A stretch of 64,000 nucleotides of DNA from Trichoplax adhaerens. Its lineage: Eukaryota > Animalia > Placozoa. Numbering within the stretch: position 1 is the first letter of the stretch; every line of letters starts with the position of its first letter. The position numbers and the translations under genes were made by a program. Below the pieces are notes generated by a model, which had not been told where the DNA came from, did not search any database, and saw only the letters and a program-made list of their open reading frames with translations. Shown here one piece after another: positions 4,607-52,268 of the stretch. The DNA lies in assembly GCF_000150275.1 (NCBI RefSeq), contig NW_002060943.1, positions 6,096,008 through 6,160,007 on the forward strand, read 5' to 3'.

Positions 4607-4903
4607 TTATAGAACTTGTTTAGCTACAATCCGCTTGAACTTGAGCTTGTCCCCAAATTGACCTAGATCCCCCTTCAATTTAGAAGCTGATGCTTCGATG
4701 AAACCTTTGACACTCTCTACGCTATCAGCGGTCGCCACAATGACGAAATGTGTGCTATCCCCAGTATCACCCACATCTTGATAAAGGTTTAGAGTTTTGA
4801 AGCCAGGTGAGCTGGAAATATCTCCTGCATTTGTTTTGAACCAATCTACAGCCACGCTAGATACGCTGTTATCGACCGTAACATCTACGTGATAAAGAGC
4901 CAT
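4607..4903 (-). CDS. small intronless dimeric alpha-beta barrel protein, DUF4286/ABM-like (98 aa)
   Basis: ATG at 4903 in AAAATGG context; GC is higher than the flanks. MALYHVDVTVDNSV...DWFK...SPGF...FVIVATADSVESVKGFIEASASKLKGDLGQFGDKLKFKRIV follows the DUF4286 pattern as I recall it (Y-x-V-x-x-x-V, W, PGF, xFGDK...R). Confidence 0.7.
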   Translation of the reverse strand: MALYHVDVTVDNSVSSVAVDWFKTNAGDISSSPGFKTLNLYQDVGDTGDSTHFVIVATADSVESVKGFIEASASKLKGDLGQFGDKLKFKRIVAKQVL

Positions 4904-32300: not shown

Positions 32301-35300
32301 CCATAGCGCAAATGCATCAAGCAGTTCAATATTATCTTGCCGTTAACGATAATTCCATCAATTCTGATAAAGAAGGAATATCAGGAATGGTAATAATGCT
32401 TTCAGTAATCGCACACAGAATATATACGCGTACTTACCCTACGTGCATAGCGATATGTCTAACAATGTAATATAATTCTTTTTAGGGTTGATTTAATAAG
32501 ATATCGCATGGATTTTTTATTAGTTATTAATATATCGCGTACTTTTATTTCCACTAGACTCCATTCGAATTCGACCAGCGCTATCGTAATCATAGCTCTA
32601 TCATCAATAACGTTTATCATCGCAATAACTTTGCAGCCTCAGGTTATGATGCTGTCTGGGCCATCGCTTTAGCATTAAATCGATCTCAAGAGCAATTTAA
32701 ATCTATGAATCGAACATTAGATCAATTCCATTATAATAATGCAGAAATGGGAAGAATTATAGCCAATCAACTTGATCAGGTCAAATTTGAAGGTATTTCG
32801 GTAAGTAAAGAGAAATTGTGCTAACTTAATTTATATTAATCTTACCTTATAAAGACAAGATTTAATGTACTATATTGCTTAATCAACGTAAAATAATTTG
32901 CGGGATAATGTATTATTGTTCATGAATATGAACTTATGCAATATGTATATTCTGAATTATTACAAGTATAAACGAAGGTATAAAATAATACAGGGACAAG
33001 AATTTTTACCTCTGTACTCATCAAAAATTATACGGAACTGTTAACTTGAGTTGCTTATCTTGTTTTTCGTATGTTTATTTTATAGAATTATATTAAATTT
33101 GACACCAAGGGTAATTTAAAAATCGATAAAGTTGATATCTTTCAACAACAAGGTAATATTCCTATTCTGATATCAGATTATACGCCAGCATTGGGCATAC
33201 TTGTGTATTTTAATATAAAAAAATGAGTCTAATTACTTCTATTAATTCAACTGACCTGGAACATATCTGAAATTATCAGTGTTACTGTACAGATTCTCAA
33301 ACTGATTTTCTGTAAATTATGTAATAGTCTGACTAATCAAAAGTCTGTTTTCAATATTATTTTCTAAATCAATCATTTATTAGACGGAAAAATTGTTCGA
33401 ATCGGATTAGCTTACCCATCAAATCGCTCGAGTAATTTCAAAATTGGCCGCAAAGTATTATGGAAAGGTACACTTCTCCATAAGATTGCTACTACAGCAT
33501 TTACAGACGGTACCCATTTCATAGCTTAGAAGTATTAAATGACTTCTAGTTGATTTAAAGCTGCCTTCAACCCGGAGTATAAATAAGCTATCATTACTGA
33601 TTTCTTCATTTTCATCATTATCCAGTATTGACTTATGTAAAGTAGTTACAAAAATTTAAGAGTATTTACTAGTTGCCCTATTCTAAGATCACTTACGTTG
33701 GTTTAGTCAATAATTACAAATCAATCAGTATACCTTATTCCTTTTTCTCGCTGATAACATACGTTGATTCGTGTATGGTAGCCGTAGTGGCAAGTGTTTG
33801 CTAACTTATAGCGCAACCTTATTCCCCTTCTTAAAATCAGGATTACATCTGCAGTATAATACGGCCTGATTGCTTTTGACTCTATCTTTTATCTATTATC
33901 ATTCTCTAGTCAATATTAATGAATAGATTATAATGTCAAGCGACATACACATATCTTATTATCATTATAAGTAAATAACGACTAAACTAGTTTAATTCCA
34001 TAACTTACTCGCTGCTATTCCCCGGTCAAAAACAAAAATAAATAAATGGTATTGGCAATATGTAGACGTACATCTTATTATAAAAAGACAATAATAATCT
34101 GATTCGTAATATTTCATAATTATATGCCGTTATTTTCCGATTGCTATTAATAGATAAATTATATGATCAAGCTGAATACGCTTACCACTATCTTACAAAC
34201 AAACCCTGACTAAATCCATTCCCATTTTAGAATTACAGACAAATTGTAGCTTGATTTATTTTATTCCGTAGTCTAAATTCTTCTGTCTTTCCATCTGTTG
34301 TTTTTGACCGATTTGGATTGTATGTTGAATTAAATTACATATTATGACTTGAATTTATATCATAGCACTATAATGAGGTAATAGCATAAGTAATAGAGCT
34401 TTGAAAACATTGATTAAATGAGAATAGTAAAAAATTCGTATGATAAAATTTAATTAGTATAAAGGATAATTTCTAAATTTTATTTTGTTAGGCAATAAGA
34501 TTCCCTATGATGGACCTATTCGGCGAACGATAACCTTAACCATTACACCGTCTCTTTTCATAACCATGGCTATCATATCCTCAATGGGCATTGCATTATC
34601 ATTAATTATGCTGGGATTGAATATAAAATATAGAAATCATAAGTAATTAAGCACTTTGTGAATGATTCAATGCCAAACTACAATTTCATGGATCGTAATA
34701 CATGTTATATTGCCAGTGTTTATACGTTAATACTGAAGCAGTAGAATATGTCTATTGTAGAGTAATAAAAGTGAAATTCCAATTTGTTTTTCTGCTGGAT
34801 TTAAAAATACGAAAGTTGATACAAATTATGTCGCGAGACATCTGTGGTTATATTTGCTTATACCATATAAAAATTATATTTCTTTATTACAGAATACATA
34901 ATGCTGACCGAAACTTAATTTTAATCTCTCAATATGCTATATGATTTAACCTAGACTGGCTAAAATATCAAATCCGCTCTTAAATACGTTTATCCTTTGT
35001 GGATTTATTCTTCTGTACTGCTCGATCATAGTTTTAGGCCTGGATGGTCGACTTCTTGATGATAAAATAGTCGATGTGTTTTGCAAGGTATAGTGCATAA
35101 TGGTTTATCGTAAAAGTAGGAATAAAGATTCAGTATTTATATGCAATTCTCCGTAATTAATGATCCTGACTTTAAACGAATACTTATCGAAAATATTACT
35201 ATAATCACTGCCGTTTTTCGCAATCCTTTTCAAATTAAAACGATAACGATACTAAAGATAAATTTTCCTTTGAAAGATTACTCCTTGGTTGTTAGTATAC

Positions 35301-37376
35301 GGTTTCTTACTCAGCTTTGGCACTCTTTTTTGCAAGATATACCGAGTTTATAGAGCATTTGCTCTTCTTAAGCCATGCAAAACGGTAACTAATGTTGGAT
35401 ACATACGTGTAAAATAGAAATTGATAACTTATAGACTTATACAAGTTTTCTTGTTGCCTTTACTTGCTTACTAGGGATTGAAAGACCCTCGTTTTAGATT
35501 GCTTATGATTGTATTATTTGCATTCAATACTATTATTTTGACATTATGGACTCTAATCGATTCGCCAACCCTGAAGAAAGTACTTTATGCCACAACAGTA
35601 AGAAAATATATCTGAGCCATTTAAATGCTGTACTTTTTCCTCTTAACATTGATAGCTCAGTAATATTCTAAACTTTGCACAATTTCTAGTCAGATATTAA
35701 CAATTACTTACAAATAAGGCTAATCAATTAACTACATATAAATCGAAAGAGTGTCTACATCTATACTTACAAGATCTCAATAATACAGAATTATTAGTCT
35801 CCTACCGTTTTAACGTGAGTTAATCTTGTCAATCTGGAAAGCATAACGGAAATTCGAGATATAAAATGAGTTTGATCGGTAGCAAATTTGGCCATATATC
35901 CTATGCATTAAACAGTCCTTCATACTGGATAGTAAGAGGATATAAATTTAGTTTTACCTTAATTCATTATAAGATAATCTAGTTACCTTTTAGAAATAAT
36001 TTATATAACATGTTCTAGATATTAGATAACAGTGAGAGATAAAGCAGCAAATATTATATTAACTCCTTACAAGTGCCAAATAATAAGAGAAATGACCGTC
36101 AATACATTCAGTTACACATTCAAGTACAATTTATATTTATGTTTTTGCACACTTCAGATTGGTTGCGTATCCAATTTCTAACAAATTTACAATAGTTACC
36201 ACTTTTATTGTATTTGCTTACATTGTGAGAATAATTATTAAGAAGTTAGTAATTTTTAATTACAAATTATTTCGATTTCAAATGTAATACTGGTTTCGAA
36301 ATATATTAAAACATCGCAGTATCATGGTACCATATAACTATAAATTCTCGTCTAAACTCTACAAACAAATATCCTTTAGCAAATCTACTTTCATCGATTT
36401 ATCTAACTGATCAAGCTAGTTATCTTTAGCATAATACCTAAATTTATATCTACATTTCAGGTACCATCCGTCTTTTTAATAGTACTTCTACCTGATTAAT
36501 TAAAGAATCTACATTTCATATAAGTTGCAACTTAAGACTAATTTTAAAATAATTTGATTTTTTGTAATTTTAACCAGATTATCAGCCCAGATTATCCTGA
36601 TACCATTATAACACCAGCTAAAGATTTGTGTGTTTCGAAATACACGAACTTATGGGTTGCTATTTTAACTAGCAGCAATGGTTTGCTAATAATTCTGGCT
36701 GCTTTTCTGGCATATGAAACACGTCAAGTCAAAGTACAAGGCCTTAATGATAGCAAGTACATTGCCATATGCATGTATAATCTTGTTTTATTGAGTGGCA
36801 TTGCTGTTCCCGTGGCTTTTGCCCTCCAACTTCATCAAGATTACCCCTACCTTGCGATTGCAAGTTTAATAATTTACTGCACATCATTATCGCTATGCTT
36901 ATTTTTTATCATTCGTGTAAGTAAGATTTTACTTATATCTTCTAGCTAAAAATATTTAAAATATACTGCTATAATTATCTCTGTGTTACTCAACTGTGGG
37001 TATCTTTAAATCTTTCAGTTTAGAATTATCTGTAAATATCCGGTGGAAGAGAGACCTATTAAGGTCTTAAAAAAGGATACATCGCTTATTTTATCGACAC
37101 AATGTGAATGCCAGTGCTCGTATACACAAAGTGAAGGCAAGCTCATAACTGCTCTAACCGTAAAGCTGCAAGAGGTACAGTAATATCAGATGTGAATCCT
37201 TAACCATTTTTAGACTAATGAGTATTATATTACTGTAGTCTAATAGAAGCATAGCTAATTATAGTAGCAGCAACTTGATGACTTTATTGCCAGTGTACTT
37301 AACTTTCTGTTTATATGACTTCTTCTATGCAGAAAAACGCCGAACTAGCAGCTTTGAAAAAAAATTTGCAATATTA
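26390..37376 (+). CDS. GABA-B receptor-like class C GPCR (Venus flytrap + 7TM + short coiled coil), ~16 exons
   Basis: Signal peptide, LYLGGFF...GAGIIPSVQMAIEDINNRNDILNDYNL (26390-26632), GPGYS (exon 29211-29348), YFYRT, GARIIFGFFYE, GYDAVWAIALALN, PYDG, LNIKYRNHK..KISNPLLN, FGTLFCKIYRVY, FLAYETRQVKVQGLNDSKYIAICMYN (36578-36916). Ends KLQEKNAELAALKKNLQY*. There is no cysteine-rich domain, as in GABA-B receptors. Confidence 0.9.
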
Positions 37377-37540: not shown

Positions 37541-39280
37541 CTAAATATCAGTTGTGGAATATAATGATTGACAAGCAGTAAATATACGAATTTTAAAGCT
37601 GGATGGAACTCTTATTCTCAAAGTAGAATTTTTATTTATTTACATTAACTTTTTCCAAATCTAACTGATTATACATATTCTGCTGTATAAGTTCGTGTTT
37701 ACCTCATTTACAATTAGCTTGAAATTTGCCTTCAATTTAAGGTTCAATAATTTAAGCGAATTAATATATTACTTCCTTTATTATAAAAGGTCTTTAAGTG
37801 TTAGTAGTCATTAAAATTCGCATATGCATATCATCCATCTATAAAGAATTATTTAATAGTTACTAATTAAGCTATAATTTACTGTTAGAATTAAAGTGCA
37901 TTTCACATAATGGATATGCCCCTATAAATAATTCTATGTTTTTCAATAATTATTAGCCGACCTAATGTAGTGCAAGACCTAGAAGTAGTGATTACAAAAT
38001 ATCGACTTTTACTTATTAAAGAGAACAATAATCCGTGTATTCAGATATATCCTATATTGTAAGCATTGATAGACTAAGAAAATGCGAATTCATAGTCTTA
38101 TCATACGTAATAGATAGCTTATAATAAGCTCAATAAATTGTATAGTCTATATCGATGATGTACAAATAGAATGCTTAAAAACGATATCTCTATTGCAACG
38201 GATTCCTATCCTGCCTATTACAGCATGTAATAATGTGTTACCCTCCTAGCCACCGATTTAGATGCATTTATACATCAAACAAGAAAAAATTCGAATTTGA
38301 GTGAACTGATTGCTTTAATAGTTTTATAGCTTCATCTAGTGCTTCATGAAGCATATAGGCATATAAAACTCTTCAATCTTACGTTTACATCAGTTGATTG
38401 CAAGCGTTTTATAATCTATTGTGGCCTAAATTTATTTTTTCAAGATCTGTAGAATCGTGCCGTAAAATTAATTACCTAATATTTCTCAGAAACAGGATTT
38501 ATATCCAGGTTACTGTAGCAATGTTGAAGTATATAAAAAGTTCTATAGTACTTCTCACACTTATTCACCTTATTTTAAAACAATGTGATGAAAAAAAATA
38601 GTAAATTTTTAACTCTTAAAACTAACAATTTCATAGTATAGCGTCAGATAATCTCAGCTTTAATACCGTATTAGGCTCCTATTATCAAATCATCAAAACA
38701 GCAATAGTAACTCAAACTTAATAAGTTCCAGAATAGGGAGCCAAAAAATGTCCATCTTCGGCTAAACCATACATTCCTAGCTCAGTTGTAAACACACGGT
38801 AAGTTTGTATTACAATTCAAAATAGGAAATTCAGTCGCCGAGATAGATTGTCATACAAACGAAGTACAAAACCGCGTTATTAGGTCAACTACAGTATATA
38901 ATTGTACACAATTTACTGAAAATAATCTAATTCGTTTTTGATGATCAAACAGAATCTAATTTACTTCACGTGATCGACTCAAAAAGTCAATGTCTAAAGA
39001 CACTTCGTAAAAAGCTGAAAACTAAATTCATGACATTCAAGTCATCCTTAACCTTACAAAACAAATTTTAAGAGCTTAACTACATCGCACATAATTTCAT
39101 GATTGATACATCTAGATCGTTTTTCTTACAGAATTAAAACACTGTATGCGATACATGTAAGTTTAATAATATGACGGCAATACTAGCGCAGTTTATTACT
39201 TTTTGATAAAGTTGATTCGCATAATAACATTGCAAGATTCTTTAATCTTCTTAATTTCAAACATAAGTACTGTAGACTCT

Positions 39281-42200
39281 TTAGGCATCATTACTACTCT
39301 TAGATTGAAGTTTCGATTTATTTCTATGGTAACATTGATCACAAACGCGTTGTAATCCTCGGTAGCCCAAATGGGACAAGTGCATTTTATGCCGGGTGCA
39401 CATCCTGCAAAAAACTTGTCCACATGACCTATGCATTTTCAAATTGGTCAAATCATTTATTTCATTACGTCGTTTTCAGAAAGTATATCAGTATTTGTAT
39501 CAAAAGTGTTTACTAAACTTACCTGCAATGATGCTGCAGACCATTTTGTAGACGTACGAGTAGTAATAAATGTACAAATATGAAAAAGGTTGTGTTAGTA
39601 ATTAGTTTTATATTTAACTTACATAAAGCTCTATCGATAGTTGCAAATGTTATAAGAAGATAATCAGTGCGTTTTTGATACCTTTCTCCTTATAGCAGTA
39701 AATCTTTGTTTACAGTCATAGCATTCAGTCGCTCGAACATCGGGAACCCATACAATACTATTAGATATATCTTCTTCGTCATCATTTACTACAGGTTCCT
39801 ATCATTGGAGTAGTTAATGAATAGGCAAAGAACTAATCTTAATATTACTAGCTTGTAAAGATGATATTAAAGGAAACAGTTAACTACAACACTAGCGAAT
39901 AACATATGAATTGTGTTAATAATATATACGTATACAGTACTTCTGGTTCTTCATTTTCAAGGACTTCTGATGAATTACGAAATGACGGTGATGCTTCACT
40001 GTAGCGTAAATAATAGTCGTCCCATAAATGTATCCTTTTCAAGCTGCAGCACGGTAGTATCACCTTACAGTAAATATTGGTAAGAGATTTTCCTTACAAA
40101 CTTAGCTACATTTTTAATTATCATACGAGTGTATCGCATTTCTCACACCTCCGTTGTTCCAAGATATTTCACATTCAAAAAATTCTCTTGATCTGCTATG
40201 ATATGTGCCCATAATGAAGGGGTATTTTCTTGTAGATTAGCCTCTTTTCTCTCTCTTTCACAGTTAAACATAAAATTTCCAAACCTACGGAATTTATAGG
40301 TAAGCAATGTTAGCATCAGTCTTAACTGTCTAATAAGGTACAATTTAAACTACTGTAGTCCATAATATTCAGCACTTTCAAATTAGCAATCTAAAGCAAT
40401 GTTTCTACAACTATACCAATAGCATATAGGATATTATTTACCATCCGCTTCCAAAATAATCAGCAATTCGTAACAAGAAATCCGAGTTGAATTCGAATGC
40501 TCTCGGAAACTGCTGCAACATCTTTATTATAAGATTATAACAAAAAAATTTTAGCCAAAATTTTTAAACTAGAATTTAGATGAACTTTACAGTAATTGCT
40601 CAAAGATTCAAGCTTTACCTGCCAAGCACAGTCAAGAAATTGTAAAAACACAGGTGATCGCTGGTTGGTTAGAACAGGATTGTTAATTCTATCTCCAAAT
40701 TTATGACCAAATGACAGCCATTCCTTTTCTATTAATACCTTAATAACCATAAGCCATACGTTACCGAGATTACAAGGCAACACATAAATGTGGAATTCTG
40801 TATATACCCTATACACTGTCAAGTGAAATGCTAAGACTTACTATAAATCCATCAATGGTTCTATAATAGCTATCTAACATTAATTGGGCCAAAGAAGTTA
40901 ACTGAGCGGTTCTATCCCATCCATCGCTACAATGAACTAAAGCACATATATGTCTTTGACTAATCCGCTGTGCAATCATAGTCGCACCCTATATTGTAAA
41001 GAAAGAATTTTAATCTAAATCTCACGTTTTAATCAATTGCCAATCCGTTAGTAGCAGAGAAAGCATATTATTGGTGAAATGTTACCACATCAAGCAATAT
41101 GTATAAACAAAGAAAGAGAACATTTATCAAAACATAGCAATATCTTTGGTACATCATAATACAGTACTGGAATAAGCTAAACACTGTACTATAATTAAGG
41201 TAATACGACACAGGATCTTCTCTGGCATGAGCCACATAGAGAAACAGAATAGTAGAGATTACTAGCAGACAATCGCTTATTAAGGTATTAAGTATTAATT
41301 ATCGGCCGATATATCAGTACATTACAGAACTGATTCTTAATTGCGAGAACAATTACCTTTAATATACTCTTTAGATATTGTAGCCATTGGGTTGATTCTA
41401 GTTGTGATAACCATTTCTTATCCGTTGTAGATTCACATATGGCAAGTAACTTATCAAAGCTTTCGCGCATAGCATGGATGTTAGCGATGTTCAAGTAAAT
41501 TAAGCGACATCCAATATAGCGATTGGTAATATCTTCAGTCCCTTTGCCCTATATCAAATAAAAGGCCCTTAAAAATTACTATTTACAATTTGATTTTGAG
41601 TTAATTATACTGTAGATGTTTAACTATCGTTCTAACCTTCAACTTATTACCACTAGCTGCCATTGCAGATCGTGCATCGAATATTACCAGTTCTTTCGAA
41701 TTCGGATTACAAAGACGTGCTTCTTCAACTAACAGTTCATCGTCTACTGAATACTAACAAAGATGAATGAAAATGACCAGCAAATCTAAAGATCTCACAT
41801 CCGAACTGAAATTACGGCGCTGTTATCGCCCATTTCTTTTACTCTACACTTATATCTGCATTATCCACGTCGCAACATAAACTGCTATCGAGACTATTTA
41901 CCTTTCCCATTGGGCCTACACTTGGTTGAGCAGATCTCATAATAAAGCTGCCATGACTTGCGTCATACCAGCTTAAACAAGGTATCCGACCCTAAATTAA
42001 ATAAAACACATAATATGCTAGATAAATCTAAATTATATATAAAGAAAACAATAAAATCGTTGAAATCTACATTTAATCTTCAGCCTATCATATATAAAAT
42101 TATCAGAAGTATTTAGTACCACTTACTCTAGATCGAAACTGAGCACATCTTTTTATAACTTCATCCTAACGGCATTGTAAAATTTGTAAACATGGTGTAA

Positions 42201-45200
42201 ATTTATGTAGTGAATATGCGTTCGAGGAAGAATCTCATAATACTTTTTTATAAGTTCAAGTCAACTAGATACATCTGATAAATATTTCATTAGATTACTT
42301 GTCTAATATTAATGACAAGCTAAGCTACGTAATGTAAATATTCTATATTTAATAAACATCAAGTATAATTATGCACGATATCAGTCAGTAAATAGTGAAG
42401 TTGTCATATAAGATCTGCGCCCCGTAATGTTATTTTGCCCTATCTACGCGAACTAGAAAGATAAATTTATTTAAGAATCTGAGAATGGTGTTGGTGCACC
42501 TAAGTTATTACAAGAAAAGCGACTTTATCTATATAAAATTTACGATATCTTTAGCGAAAAATCGAAATAACCCTCAAATGAAGGTATGTAATTGTTGCCT
42601 TGGAAGCTCTATCAATTGATGTCTACAATTACTATATATAAGACAATATTTTCTTCTTATTCGCAAAACTGATCAGCAAGAAGCCTTATTCGTAGTAATC
42701 GTTAGGAAAATGTTATCTAAGATATTATAAGTTAGCTGCGTAATGAAAAATTAGATTACTATGTGAGATTTATATACTGTGTGAAGTGATCGAAGGTACG
42801 CTAGATACCGTCATAATACATATTAATAGGCAATACATACCCCAACTGTTATTGGAACATAAATATGGGAAGGGTAAGTATCGCATAAGGAATAGTTGTA
42901 ATTTAAAGCGCTTAACCACCATTTATTGCTAAGAAGTAGCTAAATAATGGGTAAATTAATAAAGGATTAACGGTTAGCTGCGTCCACCATTTCTATTGCT
43001 ATGTCGAAATCACTATTCCAGACTTACTTTCTGCCGTTCAACTTCCTTCATGGTGTCATAACAGTTCCAATGGCTTAAAGTTAACTCTTTCTTTTTTAAT
43101 TCATAATAACTGAAACATCATCATTATGAGAACATTCAGTTATTTATTTATATATACCGTGTTGGCTAACTATACTGATAGCAAGAAAAATGCACCCAAT
43201 TCCAATTACTAACGATAGCAGCCTAATGAGAATTGTTGTACTCACCTTAGAAAGGATAGTGTAGGCGGCATGAAAATTGAATTGCTAATATGATAACACA
43301 ATCGTTCATAAAGTACACAAAAGTAAAAGTGTTGAGCGCTAGTAAAGAGATTGCAAAAAGAAATTCGATATTGAATTAGGATTTTAATACCAATTTATGT
43401 ATGCGGTAAAGAAAATACAATATAATTGAATTATTCTAACACTAAATACAGAAACTATAAATATAGAAAAAATATTAACAAACTTCGAAAATGTCCTTGA
43501 AGTAAATTCGTTGACTTTAGCATTAGCATACGCTAAGGCATCATTTGCTCGGTTGCGAATAATATCCATAAAGCCTGCCACTGAACGAGACTGCTTAACT
43601 GGTGCAGCTGTAGGGGCGTTACCTTTATTCGACCTAATTTGAACGAAATCTGAATTAAGATCCATCTTAACATTGAACTGGTCTGTTTCATGCTTTTTTG
43701 GATCAATAGTATTAGTTAATGGTGCGTTATCTTGGCAATCTCCATCATCACTTTCCTTAGATGTAAGGTCTTTACGGTCTCCATCAAGGTCCGATTCATC
43801 ATTTGCGTTACTATGAATAACTTGGCAGGCCTCAGTGATAGAACTATCTTCAACAATTACCTCAGGTGCTGTTTTAGCTTGGCTATTAACCGGAACTTCT
43901 TTTTCATTTTCATTAACATCATTACTGATAATCGGTAAAGACTTACTGTTTTCCGATACCTCAAATGCAATGCCATCACTAGCATCATCACCTTGATCAA
44001 TAGAATCTTGATGGTAATCATCAATTTTGTCGCCATCAATCGATTCCTCCTCATCACTTCCAGCTCTTGATTCATCACCATACCTAAGCTCATCATTTTC
44101 GCTAATGTCAAAATAAATACTGCTACTAGATCCCGATTTTGATAGGTTGGAAACGGCTAGATGATTTCGTTTCTTTTTCGATTTGCCACTTAAAAATGAA
44201 AATCTCACAGCCCGAAAATCAGCGCAACGGATATATAACGATTTAGCTTCTGAGTGAGCGATACTACCAGATAATGATCTCTCATAGACCTAGATAATTG
44301 ACATAGGAATATCGATATTAAATAGTTTATAAATTGGTAAAATAATTTTATTATCTAAATATCTAAGCATACAGGTATCTAAAAGCTTATAACTGACCTT
44401 TTCGTCGTCTCCTTTTTCAACGGAAGTAATCATGTTAATTGGAATAAACATCGACAAATCCTTATAGGAATATATAACATTAATCAGCAGCTAATTTTCA
44501 CTATACGCTATTTCCTCATTTGTTTTGCATAAATATCAGTGGGGTGCAGAAAATTATTGTAATTTATAGGCTATTCGTACAATACTTACTGTCCCTTCAG
44601 AAGATTTTTGAGATGCCGCTGCCGCTTGCCAAATAAAAATTAGCCTAAAATTATACGTACTATATTAAATAAATTGTTTCAATACAAGGGTAATATTACT
44701 AGATATGCCCTTCAAATTACCTTACAACTGAATGAAGCTTAGAAATTCGTAATATTAAATGCAATCTCTTACCAAATTGATTTAAAAATATTACCTAAAA
44801 TTAGTCAAAAATAATTGACCAATTCCGCGTTGTTTAGCAACTTCAATTACAACGTTATTGAACATCATTTCTATCTGTTCAGCATCTCCTACAGTTGTAA
44901 AAGTACTAATTTACTTCGATTGAAAAATTTATAAGCAGGCGAAATATTCCATGAAAATAAAATTTAAGTCAATACCTGGAAAGTCAATAATGTTATCTCC
45001 ACATAGAAACGGTAACTCGAACTGAGGAATTCTTTTGCAGATATTGTGTAATTCTTCATTTAGATACCAGTCTTCAACAGGCTATTCAGATAGGTATTCA
45101 AAGTAAATTTGATTAATACGGTAATATAAAATCATCAATCCCTTAATTATAACTGAGAATATTGCAATCTAGACGAACCTTCACATCAGTAATTGACAAT

Positions 45201-47840
45201 TCCAGATGAATTTCGCCGCTTACAATATCTTTCGGATTTATTCGGCCCAAAGTAAACCATGCATTCAATGGCTTACTTGTTATAAATGCTAATGGAATCA
45301 TTACTCGCCCCATAAAGTCATCATAATTTAAGCGATCCTGAGTACATTATTAAACAAGTAGATAAAAAAATAAGCTAATGCAACATATTTGATATCAAAG
45401 CAACAACCATACGTATCGAAACTAGTCGTACAGAAAATAAATTATTTTTAAAGATCGATCAATAGCAGATTTATTGAAATTTTTTACATAGTCGTCGATG
45501 GTTGAAGATATACGTATAAACTACTGTACAATGCTAGCATGAATAACATAATAAAAAATAAAATTTTTTAGCATTACCTTATCCCAAATATCCAGTTGAA
45601 CATAGTGAACCATAAACGATGAGTTTTTATTACCAGACAGAGCTGTTTGATCTCGATCGATATGTGGTAAATGAACAATTTCAAATTTCATGGCTTGAAG
45701 CCATTTAGGATTTAAGGTGTTGCTTTCAGTTTTTGTTCTCTCCTCATTATTACCAACTGTTACGATGCAGTATGGATCTGCTTTCCCATTGGAGTCTTTT
45801 GGTTGTAGATTTCGACATTCAATAACTATAATAGAACCAACACGGTAAAATTAACTTCGAAAATTCTCAAAACCTACAGTAGTATCGCTATCCAATTGTA
45901 TAGACTTCACATCATCATCGTAATATGCAGTATTAACCTACTATAACACTAGTATAAGCATTTTATTTGTAAGCCGATCAATAGTAATCTTATCTATTGT
46001 CACCGCTCTTACTTAGAATTTTGATAATTAATTTCAAAAGATATCATATAAAACTTAAAATAATCCTCAATTAAAAGAACATAGATCTTCACACCATTCC
46101 GCTAAGTTATAGTGAGAATAATTAGACACTGCTATCTCGTAAATTAATCAGCCACAGCTAAGCGTGCGACACTAACGCTATGACCATCTGTTTGGCCAAT
46201 ATGGCAATAATATATATGAAGTATAAGTTTGTAATCCTGGAGGCTGTTAATATCAATCGTAACTGTAGAGAAGAAAATGTCAAACTGATCTTAGTACAGA
46301 ATGATAACTGAAGGCCTAATCCTAACTATACATTTGTTGATGTCACTAAATTAGTAGAGTATAAGTTCGTAATGAGTAATGTAGTCATTCTCTAAATTAT
46401 ATGTAAAGATACAACAGAACTATGGCTAGATAATAACTGCTATTCCTGTTAGAAAATAGTAAAAAATGACCATTACGAGTCATCTTAACAATACCAAGCG
46501 TTAATATATTAGTATAGCTATATATCCTGGTTATTTTTACCATTCACTGTTAGCATGGACGCATTGCTGCCAGATCTCTTGGTAAATGCCAACAGACCGC
46601 TTTGGAGATCAGAACAATCTTCAGTTGCAGATACTTTTCGAGGAGATGGCTTACGTTTAACACCTTTCATATCTAGACCAATGCTACTTATGTTTCTAAA
46701 GCATTACAGTAAAAGAATTATTAATTATCAATATCTGGTAGCCATTGTCTAACTGTAGCGGACGGTAGTATTAAATTAATTATCTTCAATCAGTTGATTT
46801 CACGAAAATGATTTTTAAGGATTGAAGCATGAATTTTATAGCGACAAATGAGAAATGCTTGAAGTTATACCTACGGGTAAGTACGTAAAAGAGAATGATA
46901 CCGTAAATAAATCTTGTTAAATGTAAATTAATTTTCATGAATGGGGTATTGTGCGTACAATACAGTATAAAGTACAGACGTATTTTGTACAGTATATTCG
47001 GCATTTGCACACTATACATGAATTCTATATCGTACCGTATCATGACTTTCTGCTTACGAACGTTGCTATTAATATCCGGTAGACATTCGACAGATAGGGC
47101 ATATACCAGATAGACTTAGTTAAGGTTAGAGCTAGTATTAGTGCTAGGGTTAGAGCTAGAGTTAGGGTTCGTGCTACGGTTAGAGCTGGAGTTAGGGTTA
47201 AATACGAACTTCAAGAATGCATTTTATTATTTGGCTTTAGAGAAATTTGTAATCAATTACTATAATTTTGTATTGTTTACAATTAAATTTTGTATCCTAT
47301 ACGTATTTAATTACCTAGATTGTTATTTATTATTAAGAAAGCTACTGATTACTGCAATCTGTCACATTCAAGAATCTAAATTACCATAAATACAGTAACT
47401 AGTATTAAGGTACTGAGGTTTCACTTATTATATGGGTAGTATAATTGGGGTGGTGCAATTATTCTCTTATATTGTGCCATAGTATATGAATTTAAATGTA
47501 ATACAGCTTTATATCCACCTAATGGGAAAACTGCTACATGCAGGACCCTATCAGACATCTTCAGTATAATATAGATCAGCATGGCTGTCTAATGAATTCG
47601 AAATTAACGTACTGTACAATGTACATTATAGTCTGTAATACAGCTAATATTGTCAAGACAATAATCGGAATGACCGGTTGTATAATATTATATTATGAAA
47701 CGTTTCACATAAGTAAATGAATGACTTTGATAGCCTAATAATAGGAATGCAGATGATTTCAACTATCTATTTATATATCATTTTACGTATACTTACAGAG
47801 CTTTACCCAAAGCAGCGTGAATATTCTTCTTTGAAGCCAT
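39281..47840 (-). CDS. myotubularin-related phosphoinositide 3-phosphatase with N-terminal C2 domain, PH-GRAM, active PTP domain and C-terminal FYVE
   Basis: Probable first coding exon [15 protein letters not shown] (ATG 47840) splices in frame to exon 46542-46697. C2 exons 45578-45826 and 45178-45337; GRAM exons ~44200-45080 ([12 protein letters not shown]). PTP domain: [59 protein letters not shown] (~40860-40940), [40 protein letters not shown]...[18 protein letters not shown]...RVCDQC; stop TAA at 39281-39283. Confidence 0.92.
47120..47200 (+). repeat. degenerate telomere-like (TTAGGG-related) hexamer array, 13 units
   Basis: TTAAGG TTAGAG CTAGTA TTAGTG CTAGGG TTAGAG CTAGAG TTAGGG TTCGTG CTACGG TTAGAG CTGGAG TTAGGG; located in an intron of the myotubularin gene. 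Confidence 0.8.
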
Positions 47841-49054
47841 TCCGTATGTGACAATCTGTTAACAGAGTCACATGATATTAAATACGAGTACTGTTATATA
47901 AAATGCGAATCTCCAGTAATTTAATTATGTTCATCACTACGTCGTAGCACTCAGGTTAAATATCTCAATCATGCTTAAAGTATGAAAATATCAATTCATT
48001 GAAACTGTTCTGTAATCTTAGAATTATGACTGTACTGTACATTCGTAAACATGAGAGATATAAATTGTGTAAACTTATCCATTTGATACCGTTGCATCAA
48101 TAAATTCGCTCTCTCCTGGGGATAATCAAAAGTATTCAAGGTCATAAATAAATTTTATGCAAAGAAAGCGATAAAGTGATTCATAGTAAAGCCTATGATA
48201 GAAGTCGTATTTACATATTCATACCGTGATTAATGGAATTAACCAATTAACAGTAAATATTCTAAGTCTGCAGATATTGTAATATAACAATCCACAAATA
48301 GTGACCCTGAGAGATTCAACGATCTCCTCTATAATATCCTATGTGCTGTATAGCTCAAGAACATGACTTCCGTTCAAGAATAGTACAGGTATGTGGTAAG
48401 TAAAACAAAACATACGTATTGCGCATAATTTGATCTTCGATCAAAGGATGGATCAAAATTATTCATGTAACAACATTTTCGAACCATTTAGACTATTACG
48501 TTAATGAAACTTTCTGCAGTCATTTTAACCATTGTTGGATGAAATATATCATTATTAAATGAGACAAGTTAGACAAGTCAAAGATCAAATGCATAACAAG
48601 ATAACGTTTAGGTCTAGGTGTAGCTCTAATCGTGGATATTAATGTTGTAAAAGAGAAATTAAATGCTACATCATGAATGATTCCCTTGTAGTTCCGGCGA
48701 TAGCTGGTGAAAATGCATACGTATGCAACGTGCCTGTCAGGCTGCGACTGTACATTTACTTTTTCGAGCATGCACTTGTTGCATAGCTAATTGTATAAAT
48801 GCAGCTATCGATAGCAAACTGCTGCTTTGTAAACAAACATGGAGCCTACCTGCTCGAAGCCCACGAATTATCTGGTATATGGCTAGAAATGCCTGAGCTA
48901 ACCATCCAATGGTTATTCAATGAAAGATGAAACTTTCTGACTCAAGCAGGAACTTCTCAAGTCCCTCATTGCATCGTGTCACTTTTACCGTATTACAGTA
49001 ATAAGAAAGCATCAAAACAACAAATCTTGATGAATAAATAAAGAACTCTCCAAA

Positions 49055-49184
49055 CCTATTGAATTTACCGATTATATTATACTGCACTAATCCTATTGAA
49101 TTTACCGATTATACTGTATTATACTGTACTTTAGCTCCTAGTACTGTACCGTACTTGGACAGTTAGCGGTCAGTTAGCGGTCAG
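49055..49184. promoter_or_regulatory. short direct repeats and TACTGTA motifs in the myotubularin/choline-kinase divergent promoter region
   Basis: CCTATTGAATTTACCGATTAT x2 (~49055, ~49092), TACTGTA x3, CAGTTAGCGGT x2 (~49160-49181). Confidence 0.45.
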
Positions 49185-49582
49185 CCTTATCCCACTGGTT
49201 TAAAATGTGTCATTTACTATGCAAATTGCCAAATGCCATGCTGTATGGACTGAGTCTGTGCAGTATCGAGTAGTATAGTGTTTCTTTTTACATTTTAGAG
49301 CTTGATAGTTTTGTATGTAGGGAAAGTGCAATCATGACGACGTAAATATTCAAGCCGTACAGCACACACACACGACACCGGATTTAGCTGAATGAACAAG
49401 CTAAGAGCGGAGTAAGCAGGATGCTACAGTAGATTTACAGAAACCAAGGTTGATTTCCTGGCACAAATTTGGTCATAATTTTATGTTCATTACTTCTAAT
49501 ACACGCCAGCGGCAATATTACCCTTTAGGTAGCAATATAGAAGGAGTTGTGAGATATAAGTTACTATCATTGTACTCGCGCT

Positions 49583-52268
49583 ATGGCGGAAACCAATGAT
49601 GCTTTAGTCGCTGTAGGCAAGGAAAATGTTCTTAACTACTGTAAACAAGTTATTGGAGGTATTTGGGAAAAAGCTGATTTAACTAACGTACAATTTGAGA
49701 CGGTCAGGTAAGCATATACAATTATACAATAAATAAGAGTGACTAAAATGAAAGCATATGCACTGTGTAATATAGATAACAGCCATGCTATTTTGAATTA
49801 GTTGTAACCATTAAAGAAACAGTTCATTCCCACCCTATAATTCAGCAGACAATACCATACAGTATAGCAATGAATTAACCGATGTACAATACCAAGTTGC
49901 TAAGATAGCGGTTTGTGATAATTTTGAATGCCTTTAAATCTATACAGTATTTGCAAAATTAATTCTGCTAAGCATGTAACTTAAACTTGTATATGCTTCG
50001 ATAAACTGAGTGATACAGTCGGAACTCAAACTCATTGAATCCTCTAGAAGATTACACTATATGAAGACGCAGAATATTATATTCGTATTCATAGTACCAT
50101 TATGGTACTGTATTGGATTGTCATTCAAACTTTGTACACCCGGTAAACACAAAAAAACTTCCAATAACTTGACTGTTTGAAAATTAAATCACTTTACTGT
50201 AGTGGAGGACTATCAAATTATCTCTACGTGTGCAGACTATCAGAAAATTTGCAATCGACCAATAATAATGAACCTGAAAAGGTACTGATTAGAGTCTATG
50301 GAGAAACAGCCGCCAAGGGCCAACTTTTACTGCAAGAGTCAGTAATAGTTTCGTTACTGGGTGAAATAAAACTAGCTCCGAAGATATATGGATTCTTTCC
50401 TGGTGGTCGATTTGAAGAATTTCTTAATGTAACGACAAGACTTAAATTTGTAAATTTTTTAACTTAGTAATGTCAGTATGGGATGCATAACACATGCCAC
50501 AGTGTATTTGCCGCAAACCCATGTATTTTACAATATATTTGTACATTGTGTTAACTTGCTTGAATGGAATCATTTCAGGTTCATTTTTAGTTTACTGTAT
50601 GACATTATATTATGTATACTCACATAATCTTGTTGCTCATCAATAATACTTACCTGTAATAAAGGGAAGAACGTTAAAGACTAGCGAACTACAACTTCAG
50701 AATGTTTCAGAGAAAATGGCGGTCTGTTTCGCAAATTTGCATCAGGCATGCATGCCAATTTCTAAGAAACCAACCTGGTCCTCTGATTTTATAGACCGGT
50801 ATGACGGAAAATAATTTGTTTACTATAATGACGTACCAGGCAAAGCATGATACCCTAATACCGTTTAAATATCATATTTAAATCGTATTTTACTTGTTCC
50901 AAATATAATTTGACATTAAATTGTGTCCATTTTAGTCTATTTGATTCTGCAACTACCATAACATTTAATGACAAAAATAAACAAGCTAGATATGAAGAAA
51001 TTTTATCCTATGACCTTGCTGCCCGGAGAGACGAAATTCGGTTAGGATTTTATTACTTTATGAATTTGAATGTGTAAAATTATCCTGTTTGTAGACAGCT
51101 CGTTCTGATCATATATTGATCATACTCTTACATTTTAGGGATATTCTACAAGCGTGCAATTCGGAGGCATGCTTCTGCCATAATGACCTGCAAGAAAGTG
51201 TGTATAGTATAATTATGGTCTCTGATATTAAAGGCTAAAATCTAAGAATGATTTGAATCAAATACATATTTTCTAATAGATAATATCATCGTGTGTGGAG
51301 ATCCAACATCAGCTGATGCTTCGTTTCATTGCATAGACTTTGAATATGGCGGCTATAACTACAGGTGCTAGTCAACCTACATTTTCCATAATAAATCAAA
51401 AAATAATCTTGTTCAATAAAGTGTAAGCTATAAGATTCAAAATTTACTAATTTGAAACTATGTATGACTTAAAACACTACTTTATTCTGAATTAATTCAG
51501 TGCTTTCGATCTTGCAAATTACTTTTGCGAATGGTGCTACGATTACAATTGCGATAAGCCTCCTTACTTCACATATTGCTTGGACGACTATCCTTCAGAC
51601 AAGCAACAGGTAGGAGATTGTGGCTTTATCCCAGCTTCTGTAAACCAATTTCCTATTAAAATTATATCAGATACCCTTACATGGTACTATTGCATTTCTT
51701 TAGATACATTTTCTTTCATGCTACCTAAAAAAGCAATATCAGTTAAAGAAAGTTCTAGTAGACGAAAAGACCCTATCTTCGGAGCTAAGAAAATTACAAT
51801 TGGAAGTTAACAGGTTAACAAGATCTCGATCTTGGTTCTAGAATATTCTTGTATTATTCATTTCAAATACGAAATCTTTCATATAATAATTGAAAAATGC
51901 AATTGATCTTACTAGGTTAGCCCTAGCTTCTCATCTTCTTTGGACTATCTGGGCCTGTGTTCAAGCAAAAATGTCAAACATAGAGTTTGGATATTTGGTA
52001 AGTGTGACGGTCTTGCGGTCGACCAGACGATTGTAGCTATTTTTGTAATTTTTTACTATTGTCGCTGCTTGAAATAAATTGAATGAATCGTTGCTTGTGT
52101 GCGTCATCACTAATAACTTTTACATGATTCTAGCTATAAATGGTGATCAACAAACATCAATATTTATATTATAAATATATTTTATTGTTGGTTGCAAATA
52201 TATAGGAATATTCTCTTGCCCGTTTAAAGGGTTATATGAGACAGAAAAATAGACCAAATCTGTGGTAA
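49583..52268 (+). CDS. CHK: choline/ethanolamine kinase (CHKA/CHKB family), ~11 exons
   Basis: SGGLSNYLYVC, EPEKVLIRVYG, LAPKIYGFFPGGRFEEF, Brenner motif CFCHNDLQENNII, choline kinase motif IDFEYGGYNYSAFDLANYFCEW, LASHLLWTIWA..Q..MSNIEFGYLEYSLAR. Stop TAA at 52266-52268. Confidence 0.93.

What the first reader, a model, noticed from the sequence alone, without database searches (positions are those of the whole stretch)
39281..47840. Myotubularin with a complete Ca2+-type C2 domain plus FYVE: candidate calcium-switched PI3P/PI(3,5)P2 phosphatase
Seen in sequence: one spliced reading frame links a C2 domain ([25 protein letters not shown]...NTLNPKW...QLDIWDK|[12 protein letters not shown]) to PH-GRAM, an intact CSDGWDR catalytic loop and a full FYVE. 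The C2 domain keeps all five canonical Ca2+-ligating Asp positions (KD, AD-PY, WD, KD, DDF). Established: human active MTMRs have no C2 domain, and FYVE is typical of MTMR3/4. Inference: a coincidence-detecting enzyme recruited by Ca2+/anionic lipid (C2) and PI3P (FYVE) could couple calcium signals to endosomal phosphoinositide turnover in an early-branching animal. I cannot check offline whether this architecture is already catalogued.
Basis: partly seen in the sequence, partly recalled or inferred. Interest (0 to 1): 0.8.

Follow-up and report, generated by a model that had tools for sequence, protein, structure and literature searches.

The report
Trichoplax C2–myotubularin–FYVE phosphatase gene
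The stretch is one real 24-exon Trichoplax gene for a lipid phosphatase that carries a calcium-type C2 domain and a FYVE finger. This gene and its C2 domain were described in 2010, and the same architecture is annotated in cnidarians, sponges and unicellular relatives of animals, so only the calcium-switch idea remains open.

Summary
On the minus strand, 47840 (ATG) to 39281 (stop), 24 GT-AG exons with consistent phases encode 1107 aa. The order is C2 (Pfam E 1.6e-14 on one exon), PH-GRAM, an active myotubularin phosphatase (loop CSDGWDR) and a canonical FYVE finger. The FYVE HHCR motif lies on an 11-nt micro-exon.

All five Ca2+-ligand Asp positions of the C2 are present: D77, D83, D148, D150 and D156.

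The C2 exons belong to the same gene as the phosphatase:
- The intron between them is 97 nt and the phases match.
- Two public gene models join them.
- Relatives carry the whole architecture in uninterrupted ORFs on transcript-sized contigs.

It is not new. The gene is Trichoplax adhaerens TRIADDRAFT_51955. Kerk and Moorhead (2010, PMC2927912) reported "Tad51955" and a Monosiga sequence as a new myotubularin clade with an N-terminal C2 domain. C2+myotubularin+FYVE is annotated in Trichoplax sp. H2, at least seven cnidarians, sponges, Capsaspora and Salpingoeca. No bilaterian member appeared among the best 120 hits.

The phosphatase domain forms its own clade. It is closer in sequence to MTM1/MTMR1/MTMR2 than to the one MTMR3/4-like sequence retrieved.

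Ca2+-dependent recruitment is plausible, because the five Asp are kept in all animals sampled and in Capsaspora. It is untested. Verdict: real and already known, with low to moderate interest.

The parts
47797..47840 (-). Exon 0: start codon ATG at 47840, 14 codons plus 2 bases, donor GTAAGT
   Evidence: tblastn of P0151; sequence read; present in public models P0007 and P0151
46541..46695 (-). Exon 1: basic/Ser-rich N-terminus and first beta strand of the C2 domain (…MLTVN|V…); phase-1 donor
   Evidence: an in-frame internal ATG at 46670 is an alternative start
45578..45825 (-). Exon 2: C2 core with Ca2+ loop 1 (D77, D83 in DPY), NTLNPKW, an animal-specific insertion, and D148 (WD)
   Evidence: Pfam C2 E 1.6e-14; 100% match to P0007; PDB sequence hits to ferlin, Munc13-1 C2B, Syt and PKC-alpha C2 domains
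45179..45337 (-). Exon 3: C2 Ca2+ loop 3 (D150, D155/D156) and last C2 strands; phase-0 donor
   Evidence: (Munc13-1 C2B E 0.0056)
44976..45081 (-). Exon 4: linker helix and start of PH-GRAM, joined to the C2 exon across a 97-nt intron; acceptor in phase 0
   Evidence: AF2 helix 208-219 then strands
44795..44888 (-). Exon 5: PH-GRAM strands (…[10 protein letters not shown])
   Evidence: hhalign to the MTMR2 group starts here
44590..44644 (-). Exon 6: PH-GRAM (RLIFIW…)
44398..44460 (-). Exon 7: PH-GRAM (…MITSVEKG…)
43484..44289 (-). Exon 8: last PH-GRAM strands, then an acidic/Ser-rich insertion of about 210 aa predicted disordered, then the start of the long helix
   Evidence: insert is unaligned to MTMR2; pLDDT below 50 for residues 345-556
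43246..43338 (-). Exon 9: 31 codons, helix/linker before the phosphatase domain; missing from JGI model P0007
   Evidence: tblastn of P0151; splice sites AG/GT
43028..43109 (-). Exon 10: start of the phosphatase domain (…HWNCYD…ERQ)
42841..42939 (-). Exon 11: phosphatase domain (…[11 protein letters not shown]…)
   Evidence: Pfam Myotub-related E 6.6e-06
42127..42165 (-). Exon 12: 13 codons (…CAQFRSR)
41902..41991 (-). Exon 13: phosphatase domain (GRIPCLSW…)
   Evidence: Pfam E 1.4e-06
41637..41753 (-). Exon 14: phosphatase domain (…VIFDARS…); missing from JGI model P0007
   Evidence: Pfam E 0.017; P0151 100%; aligned to MTMR2
41357..41548 (-). Exon 15: phosphatase domain (…NIHAMRES…)
   Evidence: Pfam E 1.4e-16
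40842..40988 (-). Exon 16: catalytic P-loop, [12 protein letters not shown]
   Evidence: Pfam E 2.7e-21; H-C-S-D-G-W-D-R invariant in 30 clade members
40619..40738 (-). Exon 17: phosphatase domain (…[11 protein letters not shown]…)
   Evidence: Pfam E 6.9e-15
40442..40521 (-). Exon 18: phosphatase domain
   Evidence: Pfam E 8.8e-05
40149..40284 (-). Exon 19: phosphatase domain, C-terminal part
39941..40063 (-). Exon 20: end of the phosphatase domain (…LWDDYYLRY) and acidic linker; missing from JGI model P0007
39682..39798 (-). Exon 21: FYVE part 1 (WVPD, C-x2-C, RRK)
   Evidence: Pfam FYVE E 1.6e-4
39523..39533 (-). Exon 22: 11-nt micro-exon encoding H-H-C and two bases of the Arg codon of the FYVE RRKHHCR motif; skipped in JGI model P0007, which then frameshifts
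   Evidence: sequence with AG and GTAAGT flanks; required by P0151 (residues 1056-1058)
39281..39428 (-). Exon 23: FYVE part 2 (SCG…C-x2-C…RVC-x2-C) and the TAA stop at 39281-39283
   Evidence: Pfam FYVE E 2.3e-08, 34.4 bits against a cutoff of 27.8

Best explanation
This is the Trichoplax gene TRIADDRAFT_51955. It is one 24-exon minus-strand transcription unit encoding a 1107-aa, catalytically competent myotubularin-family phosphoinositide 3-phosphatase. The expected substrates are PI3P and PI(3,5)P2.

The domain order is N-terminal C2, PH-GRAM (with a long disordered acidic insertion in one loop), phosphatase, C-terminal FYVE. It belongs to an old holozoan paralogue clade, 'C2-myotubularin-FYVE', found in placozoans, cnidarians, sponges, Capsaspora and choanoflagellates. 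That clade is distinct from the six bilaterian myotubularin groups.

Likely mechanism (inferred, not shown):
- The FYVE finger holds the enzyme on PI3P-rich endosomal membrane.
- The C2 domain adds Ca2+-dependent binding to anionic phospholipid.
- A Ca2+ rise would then increase residence on the membrane and PI3P/PI(3,5)P2 removal.
- Because the FYVE ligand is also the substrate, the action would be self-limiting.
For: Gene structure:
- All junctions are GT-AG with consistent phases. The total is 3324 nt, or 1107 codons plus stop.
- The C2-to-PH-GRAM intron is only 97 nt.
- The PH-GRAM/phosphatase part has no in-frame ATG of its own before the PH-GRAM fold.
- Public models XP_002108720.1 (P0007) and Trichoplax sp. 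H2 RDD41788.1 (P0151) both join the C2 to the phosphatase.

Domains:
- Pfam on P0007: C2 E 1.8e-20, Myotub-related E 8.2e-109.
- FYVE exons.
- hhalign to the MTMR2 group: probability 100, covering PH-GRAM from residue 259 and the phosphatase domain.
- AF2 model: pLDDT of 90 or more across the C2 and phosphatase domains.
- Foldseek: TM 0.86 to MTMR2 (1lw3, 1zvr) and TM 0.81 to Ca2+-bound Munc13-1 C2B (6nyt).

Conservation:
- HCSDGWDR is invariant. FYVE Cys, WxxD and RRHHCR are 90% or more conserved in 30 clade members.
- All five C2 Asp are kept in 24 of 30 members, including every animal and Capsaspora.

Distribution, transcripts and literature:
- The same Pfam triple appears in Nematostella, Actinia, Orbicella, Dendronephthya, Oopsacas, Dysidea, Capsaspora and Salpingoeca.
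- One Logan contig of 3383 nt carries an uninterrupted 1002-aa ORF with all three domains.
- In the tree the clade has SH-aLRT 99.
- Kerk and Moorhead 2010 describe Tad51955 as a 'new clade' with an N-terminal C2 domain.
Against:
- Ca2+ binding, lipid specificity and catalysis are all inferred from sequence.
- The five Asp are lost in Salpingoeca rosetta and in several unnamed protist members, so Ca2+ control is not universal in the clade.
- The FYVE part of the AF2 model has only moderate confidence, pLDDT about 57-75.
- Pfam's GRAM model does not score the PH-GRAM region.
- The tree is a quick search with only two distant outgroups. It cannot place the clade relative to MTMR3/4 and MTMR6-8.
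Confidence: 0.85

Rival explanations
1. Same gene and same enzyme, but the C2 domain is a constitutive, Ca2+-independent lipid- or protein-binding module. On this reading there is no calcium switch, and the extra domains only refine which membrane the enzyme sits on.
For: Several clade members have lost one to three of the five Asp: Salpingoeca rosetta and P0201, P0193, P0203 and P0271. Their domain architecture is otherwise intact, so the C2 has a role that does not need Ca2+. An intact Asp set is necessary for Ca2+-triggered membrane binding but not sufficient (established knowledge of C2 domains). The nearest folds include both Ca2+-dependent and Ca2+-independent C2 domains: intersectin 2, PKC-epsilon and Itch.
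Against: All five Asp, with exact canonical spacing, are retained in every placozoan, cnidarian, sponge and Capsaspora sequence aligned. The one change is a D-to-E at the fifth position in Oopsacas. That is hard to explain without selection on metal binding. The best single-domain structural match is the Ca2+-bound Munc13-1 C2B.
Confidence: 0.3
2. The C2 exons (47840-45179) are a separate small C2-only gene, and the myotubularin-FYVE gene starts downstream. On this reading the fusion is an annotation artefact.
For: Reading through the donor after 45179 meets a stop 12 codons later, so a C2-only product is formally possible. Some sponge and unnamed relatives are listed with FYVE+Myotub but no C2, for example Corticium isoform X2 and Ephydatia.
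Against: - The intron is 97 nt with matching phase 0 on both sides.
- No in-frame ATG lies upstream of the PH-GRAM fold in the downstream exons.
- Two independent annotations join the two parts.
- More than 20 relatives have the fused architecture. They include complete ORFs on Trinity/TransDecoder and MMETSP transcripts and an uninterrupted ORF on a 3.4-kb contig.
- No other gene lies between the two parts.
Confidence: 0.03
3. The gene is an MTMR3/MTMR4 orthologue that picked up a C2 domain in Placozoa.
For: A C-terminal FYVE is the hallmark of the MTMR3/4 group (Kerk and Moorhead). One Latimeria FYVE-bearing myotubularin was hit at 43% identity over 25% of the query.
Against: - Kerk and Moorhead place another Trichoplax gene (Tad64213) in the R3 group and Tad51955 in a separate clade, with posterior 0.998 and bootstrap 97.5.
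- The best non-clade hits are MTM1/MTMR1/MTMR2 sequences at 45-48% identity.
- The architecture predates Placozoa, since Capsaspora and choanoflagellates have it.
Confidence: 0.05

Closest known systems
Tad51955 / Monosiga M01745983C 'new clade' of C2-bearing myotubularins (Kerk and Moorhead 2010, BMC Evol Biol 10:196, PMC2927912)
   Same: It is the same gene, TRIADDRAFT_51955, with an N-terminal C2, PH-GRAM and an active phosphatase.
   Different: The 2010 paper used the JGI model. That model lacks four exons and has only half a FYVE, so the FYVE finger was not reported. The five Ca2+ ligands and the spread to Cnidaria, Porifera and Filasterea were not described there either.
Trichoplax sp. 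H2 'Myotubularin' RDD41788.1 and cnidarian/sponge/Capsaspora/Salpingoeca proteins annotated PF00168+PF06602+PF01363
   Same: The exon structure is identical to the H2 model (1107 aa), and the H2 locus is 99.4-99.5% identical in DNA. Relatives have the same three Pfam domains in the same order and are 45-55% identical in the phosphatase domain.
   Different: Trichoplax has a longer disordered acidic insertion in the PH-GRAM loop. Choanoflagellate and some protist members lack part of the Asp set.
MTM1/MTMR1/MTMR2 (for example MTMR2, PDB 1lw3, 1zsq, 1zvr)
   Same: PH-GRAM plus phosphatase fold (TM 0.86). The CSDGWDR loop is identical. Identity is 42% over 483 aligned profile columns.
   Different: These proteins have no C2 and no FYVE. 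They carry a coiled-coil/PDZ-binding tail instead. They form a separate clade in the tree.
MTMR3/MTMR4
   Same: An active myotubularin with a C-terminal FYVE finger.
   Different: They have no C2. The phosphatase domain here is not closest to them, and Trichoplax has its own R3-group gene (Tad64213, per Kerk and Moorhead).
Munc13-1 C2B, PKC-alpha C2 and synaptotagmin C2 (Ca2+/phospholipid-binding C2 domains)
   Same: Eight-stranded C2 sandwich. Five Asp with the same spacing in loops 1 and 3. Foldseek TM 0.81 to Ca2+-bound Munc13-1 C2B.
   Different: Sequence identity is only about 26-28%. An insertion of about 20 residues lies between strands 4 and 5 and is specific to animal members. Ca2+ binding is unmeasured.

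Membership tests
Myotubularin family (active members) | Pfam PF06602 Myotub-related phosphatase domain | tested here: met
   Nine exon segments hit PF06602. Public product P0007 scores E 8.2e-109.
Myotubularin family (active members) | Catalytic C-x5-R loop with the sequence CSDGWDR | tested here: met
   [12 protein letters not shown] is encoded in exon 40842-40988. It is invariant in 30 clade members.
Myotubularin family (active members) | PH-GRAM domain N-terminal to the phosphatase domain | tested here: met
   hhalign aligns residues 259-345 to the MTMR2 PH-GRAM. AF2 predicts strands at 225-341. Foldseek matches to MTMR2 span both domains. Pfam's GRAM model itself does not score.
Myotubularin family (active members) | 3-phosphatase activity on PI3P and PI(3,5)P2 | not testable with these tools
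   Needs an enzyme assay.
Ca2+-binding C2 domains | Pfam PF00168 and an eight-stranded beta sandwich | tested here: met
   E 1.6e-14 on one exon and E 1.8e-20 over profile positions 2-104 of 104 in P0007. AF2 predicts eight strands at 61-199 with pLDDT about 90 or more. Structural matches to C2 domains.
Ca2+-binding C2 domains | Five acidic Ca2+ ligands: two in loop 1 (D-x5-D-P-Y) and three in loop 3 (D-x-D-x5-D) | tested here: met
   D77, D83, D148, D150 and D156 are present. They are conserved in 24 of 30 clade members. Mapping onto Syt1/PKC-alpha ligand positions rests on established knowledge, not on an alignment made here.
Ca2+-binding C2 domains | Measured Ca2+-dependent phospholipid binding | not testable with these tools
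   Needs liposome binding with and without Ca2+.
FYVE zinc fingers (PI3P-binding) | WxxD, (R/K)(R/K)HHCR and RVC motifs plus eight zinc-binding Cys | tested here: met
   WVPD, RRKHHCR (across the micro-exon), RVC, and four C-x2-C or C-x-x-C pairs can be read in exons 21-23. Pfam FYVE scores 34.4 bits against a cutoff of 27.8 on the last exon. The motifs are 90% or more conserved in the clade.
MTMR3/MTMR4 subgroup | Phosphatase domain groups with MTMR3/4 in phylogeny | tested here: inconclusive
   The quick tree has one R3/4-like outgroup on a long branch with a weak node. Best non-clade hits are MTM1/MTMR1/MTMR2. The published analysis places the gene outside R3.
C2-myotubularin 'new clade' (Kerk and Moorhead 2010) | Identity with, or clustering with, Tad51955, and an N-terminal C2 domain | tested here: met
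   The C2 exon is 100% identical to TRIADDRAFT_51955. The clade of 23 C2- and/or FYVE-bearing sequences has SH-aLRT 99.

The most novel reading that the evidence does not exclude
The C2-myotubularin-FYVE clade is a genuinely Ca2+-gated PI3P/PI(3,5)P2 phosphatase. On this reading it is an ancestral holozoan link between calcium signals and endosomal or autophagic phosphoinositide turnover. It was kept in placozoans, cnidarians, sponges and filastereans and lost in bilaterians.
Probability: 0.35. Interest if true: 0.5.

Novelty: already known. Interest (0 to 1): 0.25.

Why it matters
Myotubularins control PI3P and PI(3,5)P2 on endosomes and autophagic membranes, and human family members cause myopathy and neuropathy when mutated. 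No direct Ca2+ sensor domain has been described in the bilaterian enzymes. A clade that fuses a Ca2+-type C2 and a PI3P-binding FYVE to an active myotubularin would be a natural example of calcium-coupled PI3P removal, and a lineage-specific loss in bilaterians.

The architecture itself has been in the literature since 2010 and is in the public databases.
- A corrected 24-exon model for T. adhaerens with a complete FYVE.
- The observation that the five Ca2+ ligands are conserved across animal and Capsaspora members.
- A wider taxonomic distribution than the 2010 paper could see.

Tried and rejected
- My first 22-exon model started at the ATG at 46670 and gave 1053 aa. It missed exon 0 and the exon at 43246-43338. 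Mapping P0151 onto the window corrected it.
- The open frame that seems to extend the C2 exon upstream (FYRVGSII…) has no usable acceptor and is separated from the next open stretch by TAA. I considered a stop-codon-reassigned organism and dropped the idea once the phase-1 donor at 46541 was found to fit the acceptor at 45825.
- The representative search with the C2 exon returned mostly multi-C2 proteins. Apart from the gene's own product, it could not show orthologues.
- The first word search with whole P0007 scored only 4 hits among the 8000 candidates that were scored. Restricting it to the phosphatase region worked.
- Exon-versus-intron conservation against the Trichoplax sp. H2 locus was uninformative. 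Exons are 99.5% and introns 99.4% identical.
- The careful maximum-likelihood tree did not finish in the time limit, so only the quick tree is reported.
- Three literature searches found no functional study of a C2-bearing myotubularin in the held library.
The window was searched exon by exon by reference. The public proteins P0007 and P0151 stood in for the spliced product.

Full report
**What is in the window**

The window is AT-rich (about 32% G+C) and intron-rich. On the minus strand between 47840 and 39281, stop-free segments encode in colinear order a C2 domain, PH-GRAM-like strands, the myotubularin phosphatase domain and a FYVE finger.

Exon-by-exon Pfam scans by reference gave these results:
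- C2: E 1.6e-14 for 45524-45850.
- Myotub-related: nine segments, including E 2.7e-21 for the catalytic exon carrying [12 protein letters not shown].
- FYVE: E 1.6e-4 and E 2.3e-08 for the last two large exons.

**Gene model**

I read the splice sites directly and checked them by script. This gives 24 exons, all flanked by AG and GT, with consistent phases. They total 3324 nt, which is 1107 codons plus a TAA stop at 39281-39283.

- The ATG at 47840 opens a 44-nt exon 0.
- Exon 1 (46695-46541) ends in phase 1 after …MLTVN.
- It joins the acceptor at 45825 to give …MLTVN-V-IECRNL…, a typical first C2 strand.
- The open frame that seems to continue upstream of 45825 is therefore intron.
- The second C2 exon ends at WDK (45578) and the third runs 45337-45179.
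- A 97-nt intron then leads, in phase 0 on both sides, to the exon at 45081 that starts the linker and PH-GRAM.
- The FYVE motif RRK-HHCR-SCG is assembled from exon 21, an 11-nt micro-exon (39533-39523, CAT CAT TGC AG) and exon 23.

The window was searched exon by exon by reference. Public protein ids served as the spliced product.

**Identity of the gene**

A search of 1.84 billion representative proteins with the C2 exon found a 957-aa protein that is 100% identical over all 82 residues (P0007). The other top hits were multi-C2 proteins.

P0007 is XP_002108720.1 / TRIADDRAFT_51955 / UniProt B3RLC2 of Trichoplax adhaerens. Its sequence follows my junctions from the C2 into PH-GRAM and the phosphatase.

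It differs from my model in these ways:
- It omits exons 43338-43246, 41753-41637 and 40063-39941.
- It omits the micro-exon and so ends in a frameshifted tail with only half a FYVE (Pfam FYVE E 0.0091).

The Trichoplax sp. H2 protein RDD41788.1 (P0151, 1107 aa) carries PF00168, PF06602 and PF01363. It maps onto the window exon for exon, including exon 0 at 47840-47796. Its genomic locus (L002) has AG/GT at every one of my junctions. That locus is 99.5% identical in exons and 99.4% in introns, so conservation cannot discriminate exons from introns.

**Is the C2 on the same transcript?**

The evidence is indirect for T. adhaerens but strong.
- The connecting intron is short and phase-matched.
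- No in-frame start codon lies upstream of the PH-GRAM fold in the downstream exons.
- Two independent public annotations join the parts.
- No other gene lies between them.
- The architecture recurs in many relatives. Some are named as complete ORFs on Trinity/TransDecoder or MMETSP transcripts.
- A 3383-nt Logan contig (L001) carries an uninterrupted 1002-aa ORF with C2, Myotub-related and FYVE. A contig that is 89% coding, for a gene that is multi-exonic here in Trichoplax, is best explained as mRNA-derived. That last step is an inference.

**Domains and residues**

- Profile-profile comparison of 30 clade members (A1) with 15 MTM1/MTMR1/MTMR2 sequences (A2) gives probability 100. It aligns 483 columns at 42% identity, from [12 protein letters not shown] (residue 259, PH-GRAM) to residue 1001.
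- An insertion of about 210-240 aa, acidic and Ser-rich, sits in a PH-GRAM loop and is unaligned.
- The AlphaFold2 model of P0151 with A1 has mean pLDDT 70.6 and pTM 0.69.
  - Residues 61-199 form an eight-stranded sandwich, with pLDDT mostly 86-98 and a dip in the inserted loop at about residues 121-140.
  - PH-GRAM strands occupy 225-341.
  - Residues 345-556 are disordered.
  - The phosphatase domain is modelled with high confidence.
  - The FYVE region has moderate confidence, pLDDT about 57-75.
- Foldseek matches MTMR2 structures (1lw3, 1zsq, 1zvr; TM 0.86 by target). For the N-terminal domain it matches Ca2+-bound Munc13-1 C2B (6nyt, TM 0.81), intersectin 2 C2 and E-Syt2.
- PDB sequence hits for the C2 exons are ferlins, Munc13-1 C2B, synaptotagmins, MCTP2 and PKC-alpha.
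Their spacing is D-x5-D in loop 1 and D-x-D-x5-D in loop 3. By established knowledge this is the pattern of the Ca2+ ligands of synaptotagmin-1 C2A and PKC-alpha C2.
- In A1 all five Asp are present in 24 of 30 sequences. That includes every placozoan, cnidarian and Capsaspora sequence. The sponge Oopsacas has D-to-E at the fifth position. Salpingoeca rosetta and four unnamed protist sequences have lost one to three.
- HCSDGWDR is invariant. The FYVE WxxD, RRHHCR, Cys and RVC positions are invariant or 90% or more conserved.

**Distribution and phylogeny**

A word search restricted to the phosphatase region of P0151 listed the PF00168+PF01363+PF06602 combination in these named taxa:
- Cnidaria: Actinia, Nematostella (LOC5520963), Orbicella and Dendronephthya. 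Acropora, Paramuricea and Clytia are listed with C2 plus phosphatase only.
- Sponges: Oopsacas and Dysidea.
- Unicellular holozoans: Capsaspora owczarzaki and Salpingoeca rosetta.
- Many unnamed transcript-sized contigs also carry it.

These hits are 45-55% identical to the query. No named bilaterian protein with a C2 appears among the best 120 hits. The next-best hits are bilaterian MTM1/MTMR1/MTMR2 at 45-48%.

A quick maximum-likelihood tree of 35 phosphatase domains puts the 23 C2- and/or FYVE-bearing sequences on one side of a long branch (SH-aLRT 99). The ten bilaterian MTM1/R1/R2 sequences fall on the other side (SH-aLRT 90). FYVE-only sequences are interspersed in the clade. This fits truncated models or isoforms rather than a separate family. 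The careful search did not finish, and the two outgroups sit on long, weakly placed branches. The relation to MTMR3/4 and MTMR6-8 is therefore not resolved here.

**Prior knowledge**

Kerk and Moorhead (BMC Evol Biol 2010, PMC2927912) state three things about Tad51955 and Monosiga M01745983C:
[quoted passage not shown] They also place other Trichoplax genes in each of the six usual groups, including Tad64213 in the FYVE-bearing R3 group. Three further literature searches found no functional study of this clade in the held library.

**Mechanism**

- Shown: an intact catalytic loop, an MTMR2-like fold, canonical FYVE motifs and a full set of C2 Ca2+ ligands that is conserved across animals.
- Inferred: the protein dephosphorylates PI3P and PI(3,5)P2, is held on PI3P membranes by the FYVE, and gains Ca2+-dependent affinity for anionic membranes through the C2. 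This would couple Ca2+ rises to PI3P removal, self-limited because the FYVE ligand is the substrate.
- Main rival: the C2 is a Ca2+-independent targeting module. The loss of the Asp set in choanoflagellate and other protist members favours this. The strict retention of the Asp set in animals and Capsaspora argues against it.

**Surroundings**

- Downstream, tail to tail on the plus strand, lies a class C GPCR (ANF_receptor and 7tm_3 exons at 32.5-37 kb).
- Upstream, divergent on the plus strand, lies a choline/ethanolamine kinase at 50.2-51.8 kb.
- Further on is a MutS-family gene on the minus strand, around 54.4-54.6 kb.

**Verdict**

The architecture is already published for this very gene and widely annotated. 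Interest is low to moderate.

Noticed in passing
window 39523-39533 (-): An 11-nt micro-exon (CAT CAT TGC AG) encodes the HHC(R) core of the FYVE motif. The public T. adhaerens model XP_002108720.1 skips it and ends in a frameshifted tail (…[16 protein letters not shown]). The Trichoplax sp. H2 model includes it.
   Followed up: yes
window 43246-43338, 41637-41753, 39941-40063 (-): Three further coding exons are absent from XP_002108720.1 (957 aa) but present in the H2 model (1107 aa). The T. adhaerens database entry is therefore an incomplete model.
   Followed up: yes
window about 43560-44190 (-), residues about 345-556: An acidic/Ser-rich insertion of about 210 aa lies inside a PH-GRAM loop. 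It is predicted disordered (pLDDT about 25-31) and is unaligned to MTMR2.
   Followed up: partly
window 45600-45670 (-), residues about 115-140: Animal members of the clade share an insertion of about 20 residues between C2 strands 4 and 5 (…vPQ…). Capsaspora and the choanoflagellate-type members lack it.
   Followed up: partly
window 47118-47200: A short degenerate tandem repeat in intron 1 (periods 12, 18 and 30) contains telomere-like GGTTAG/TTAGGG units.
   Followed up: no
L002 (Trichoplax sp. H2, NOWV01000067.1) against window 37781-49340: The H2 locus is 99.4-99.5% identical to the window in exons and introns alike. At this locus the two named placozoan lineages are nearly indistinguishable.
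   Followed up: partly
window 26354-36946 (+): A class C GPCR gene, with an ANF_receptor exon at 32558-32821 and a 7tm_3 exon at 36548-36946, lies tail to tail with the myotubularin gene.
   Followed up: partly
window 50168-51807 (+); 54407-54640 (-); 8788-10308 (-); 4610-4978 (-): Other genes in the window: choline/ethanolamine kinase exons; a MutS domain V exon; a 507-aa single-exon Core-2/I-branching enzyme ORF; and an open frame matching DUF4286 (E 7.6e-07), already noted by the scan as an HGT candidate.
   Followed up: partly
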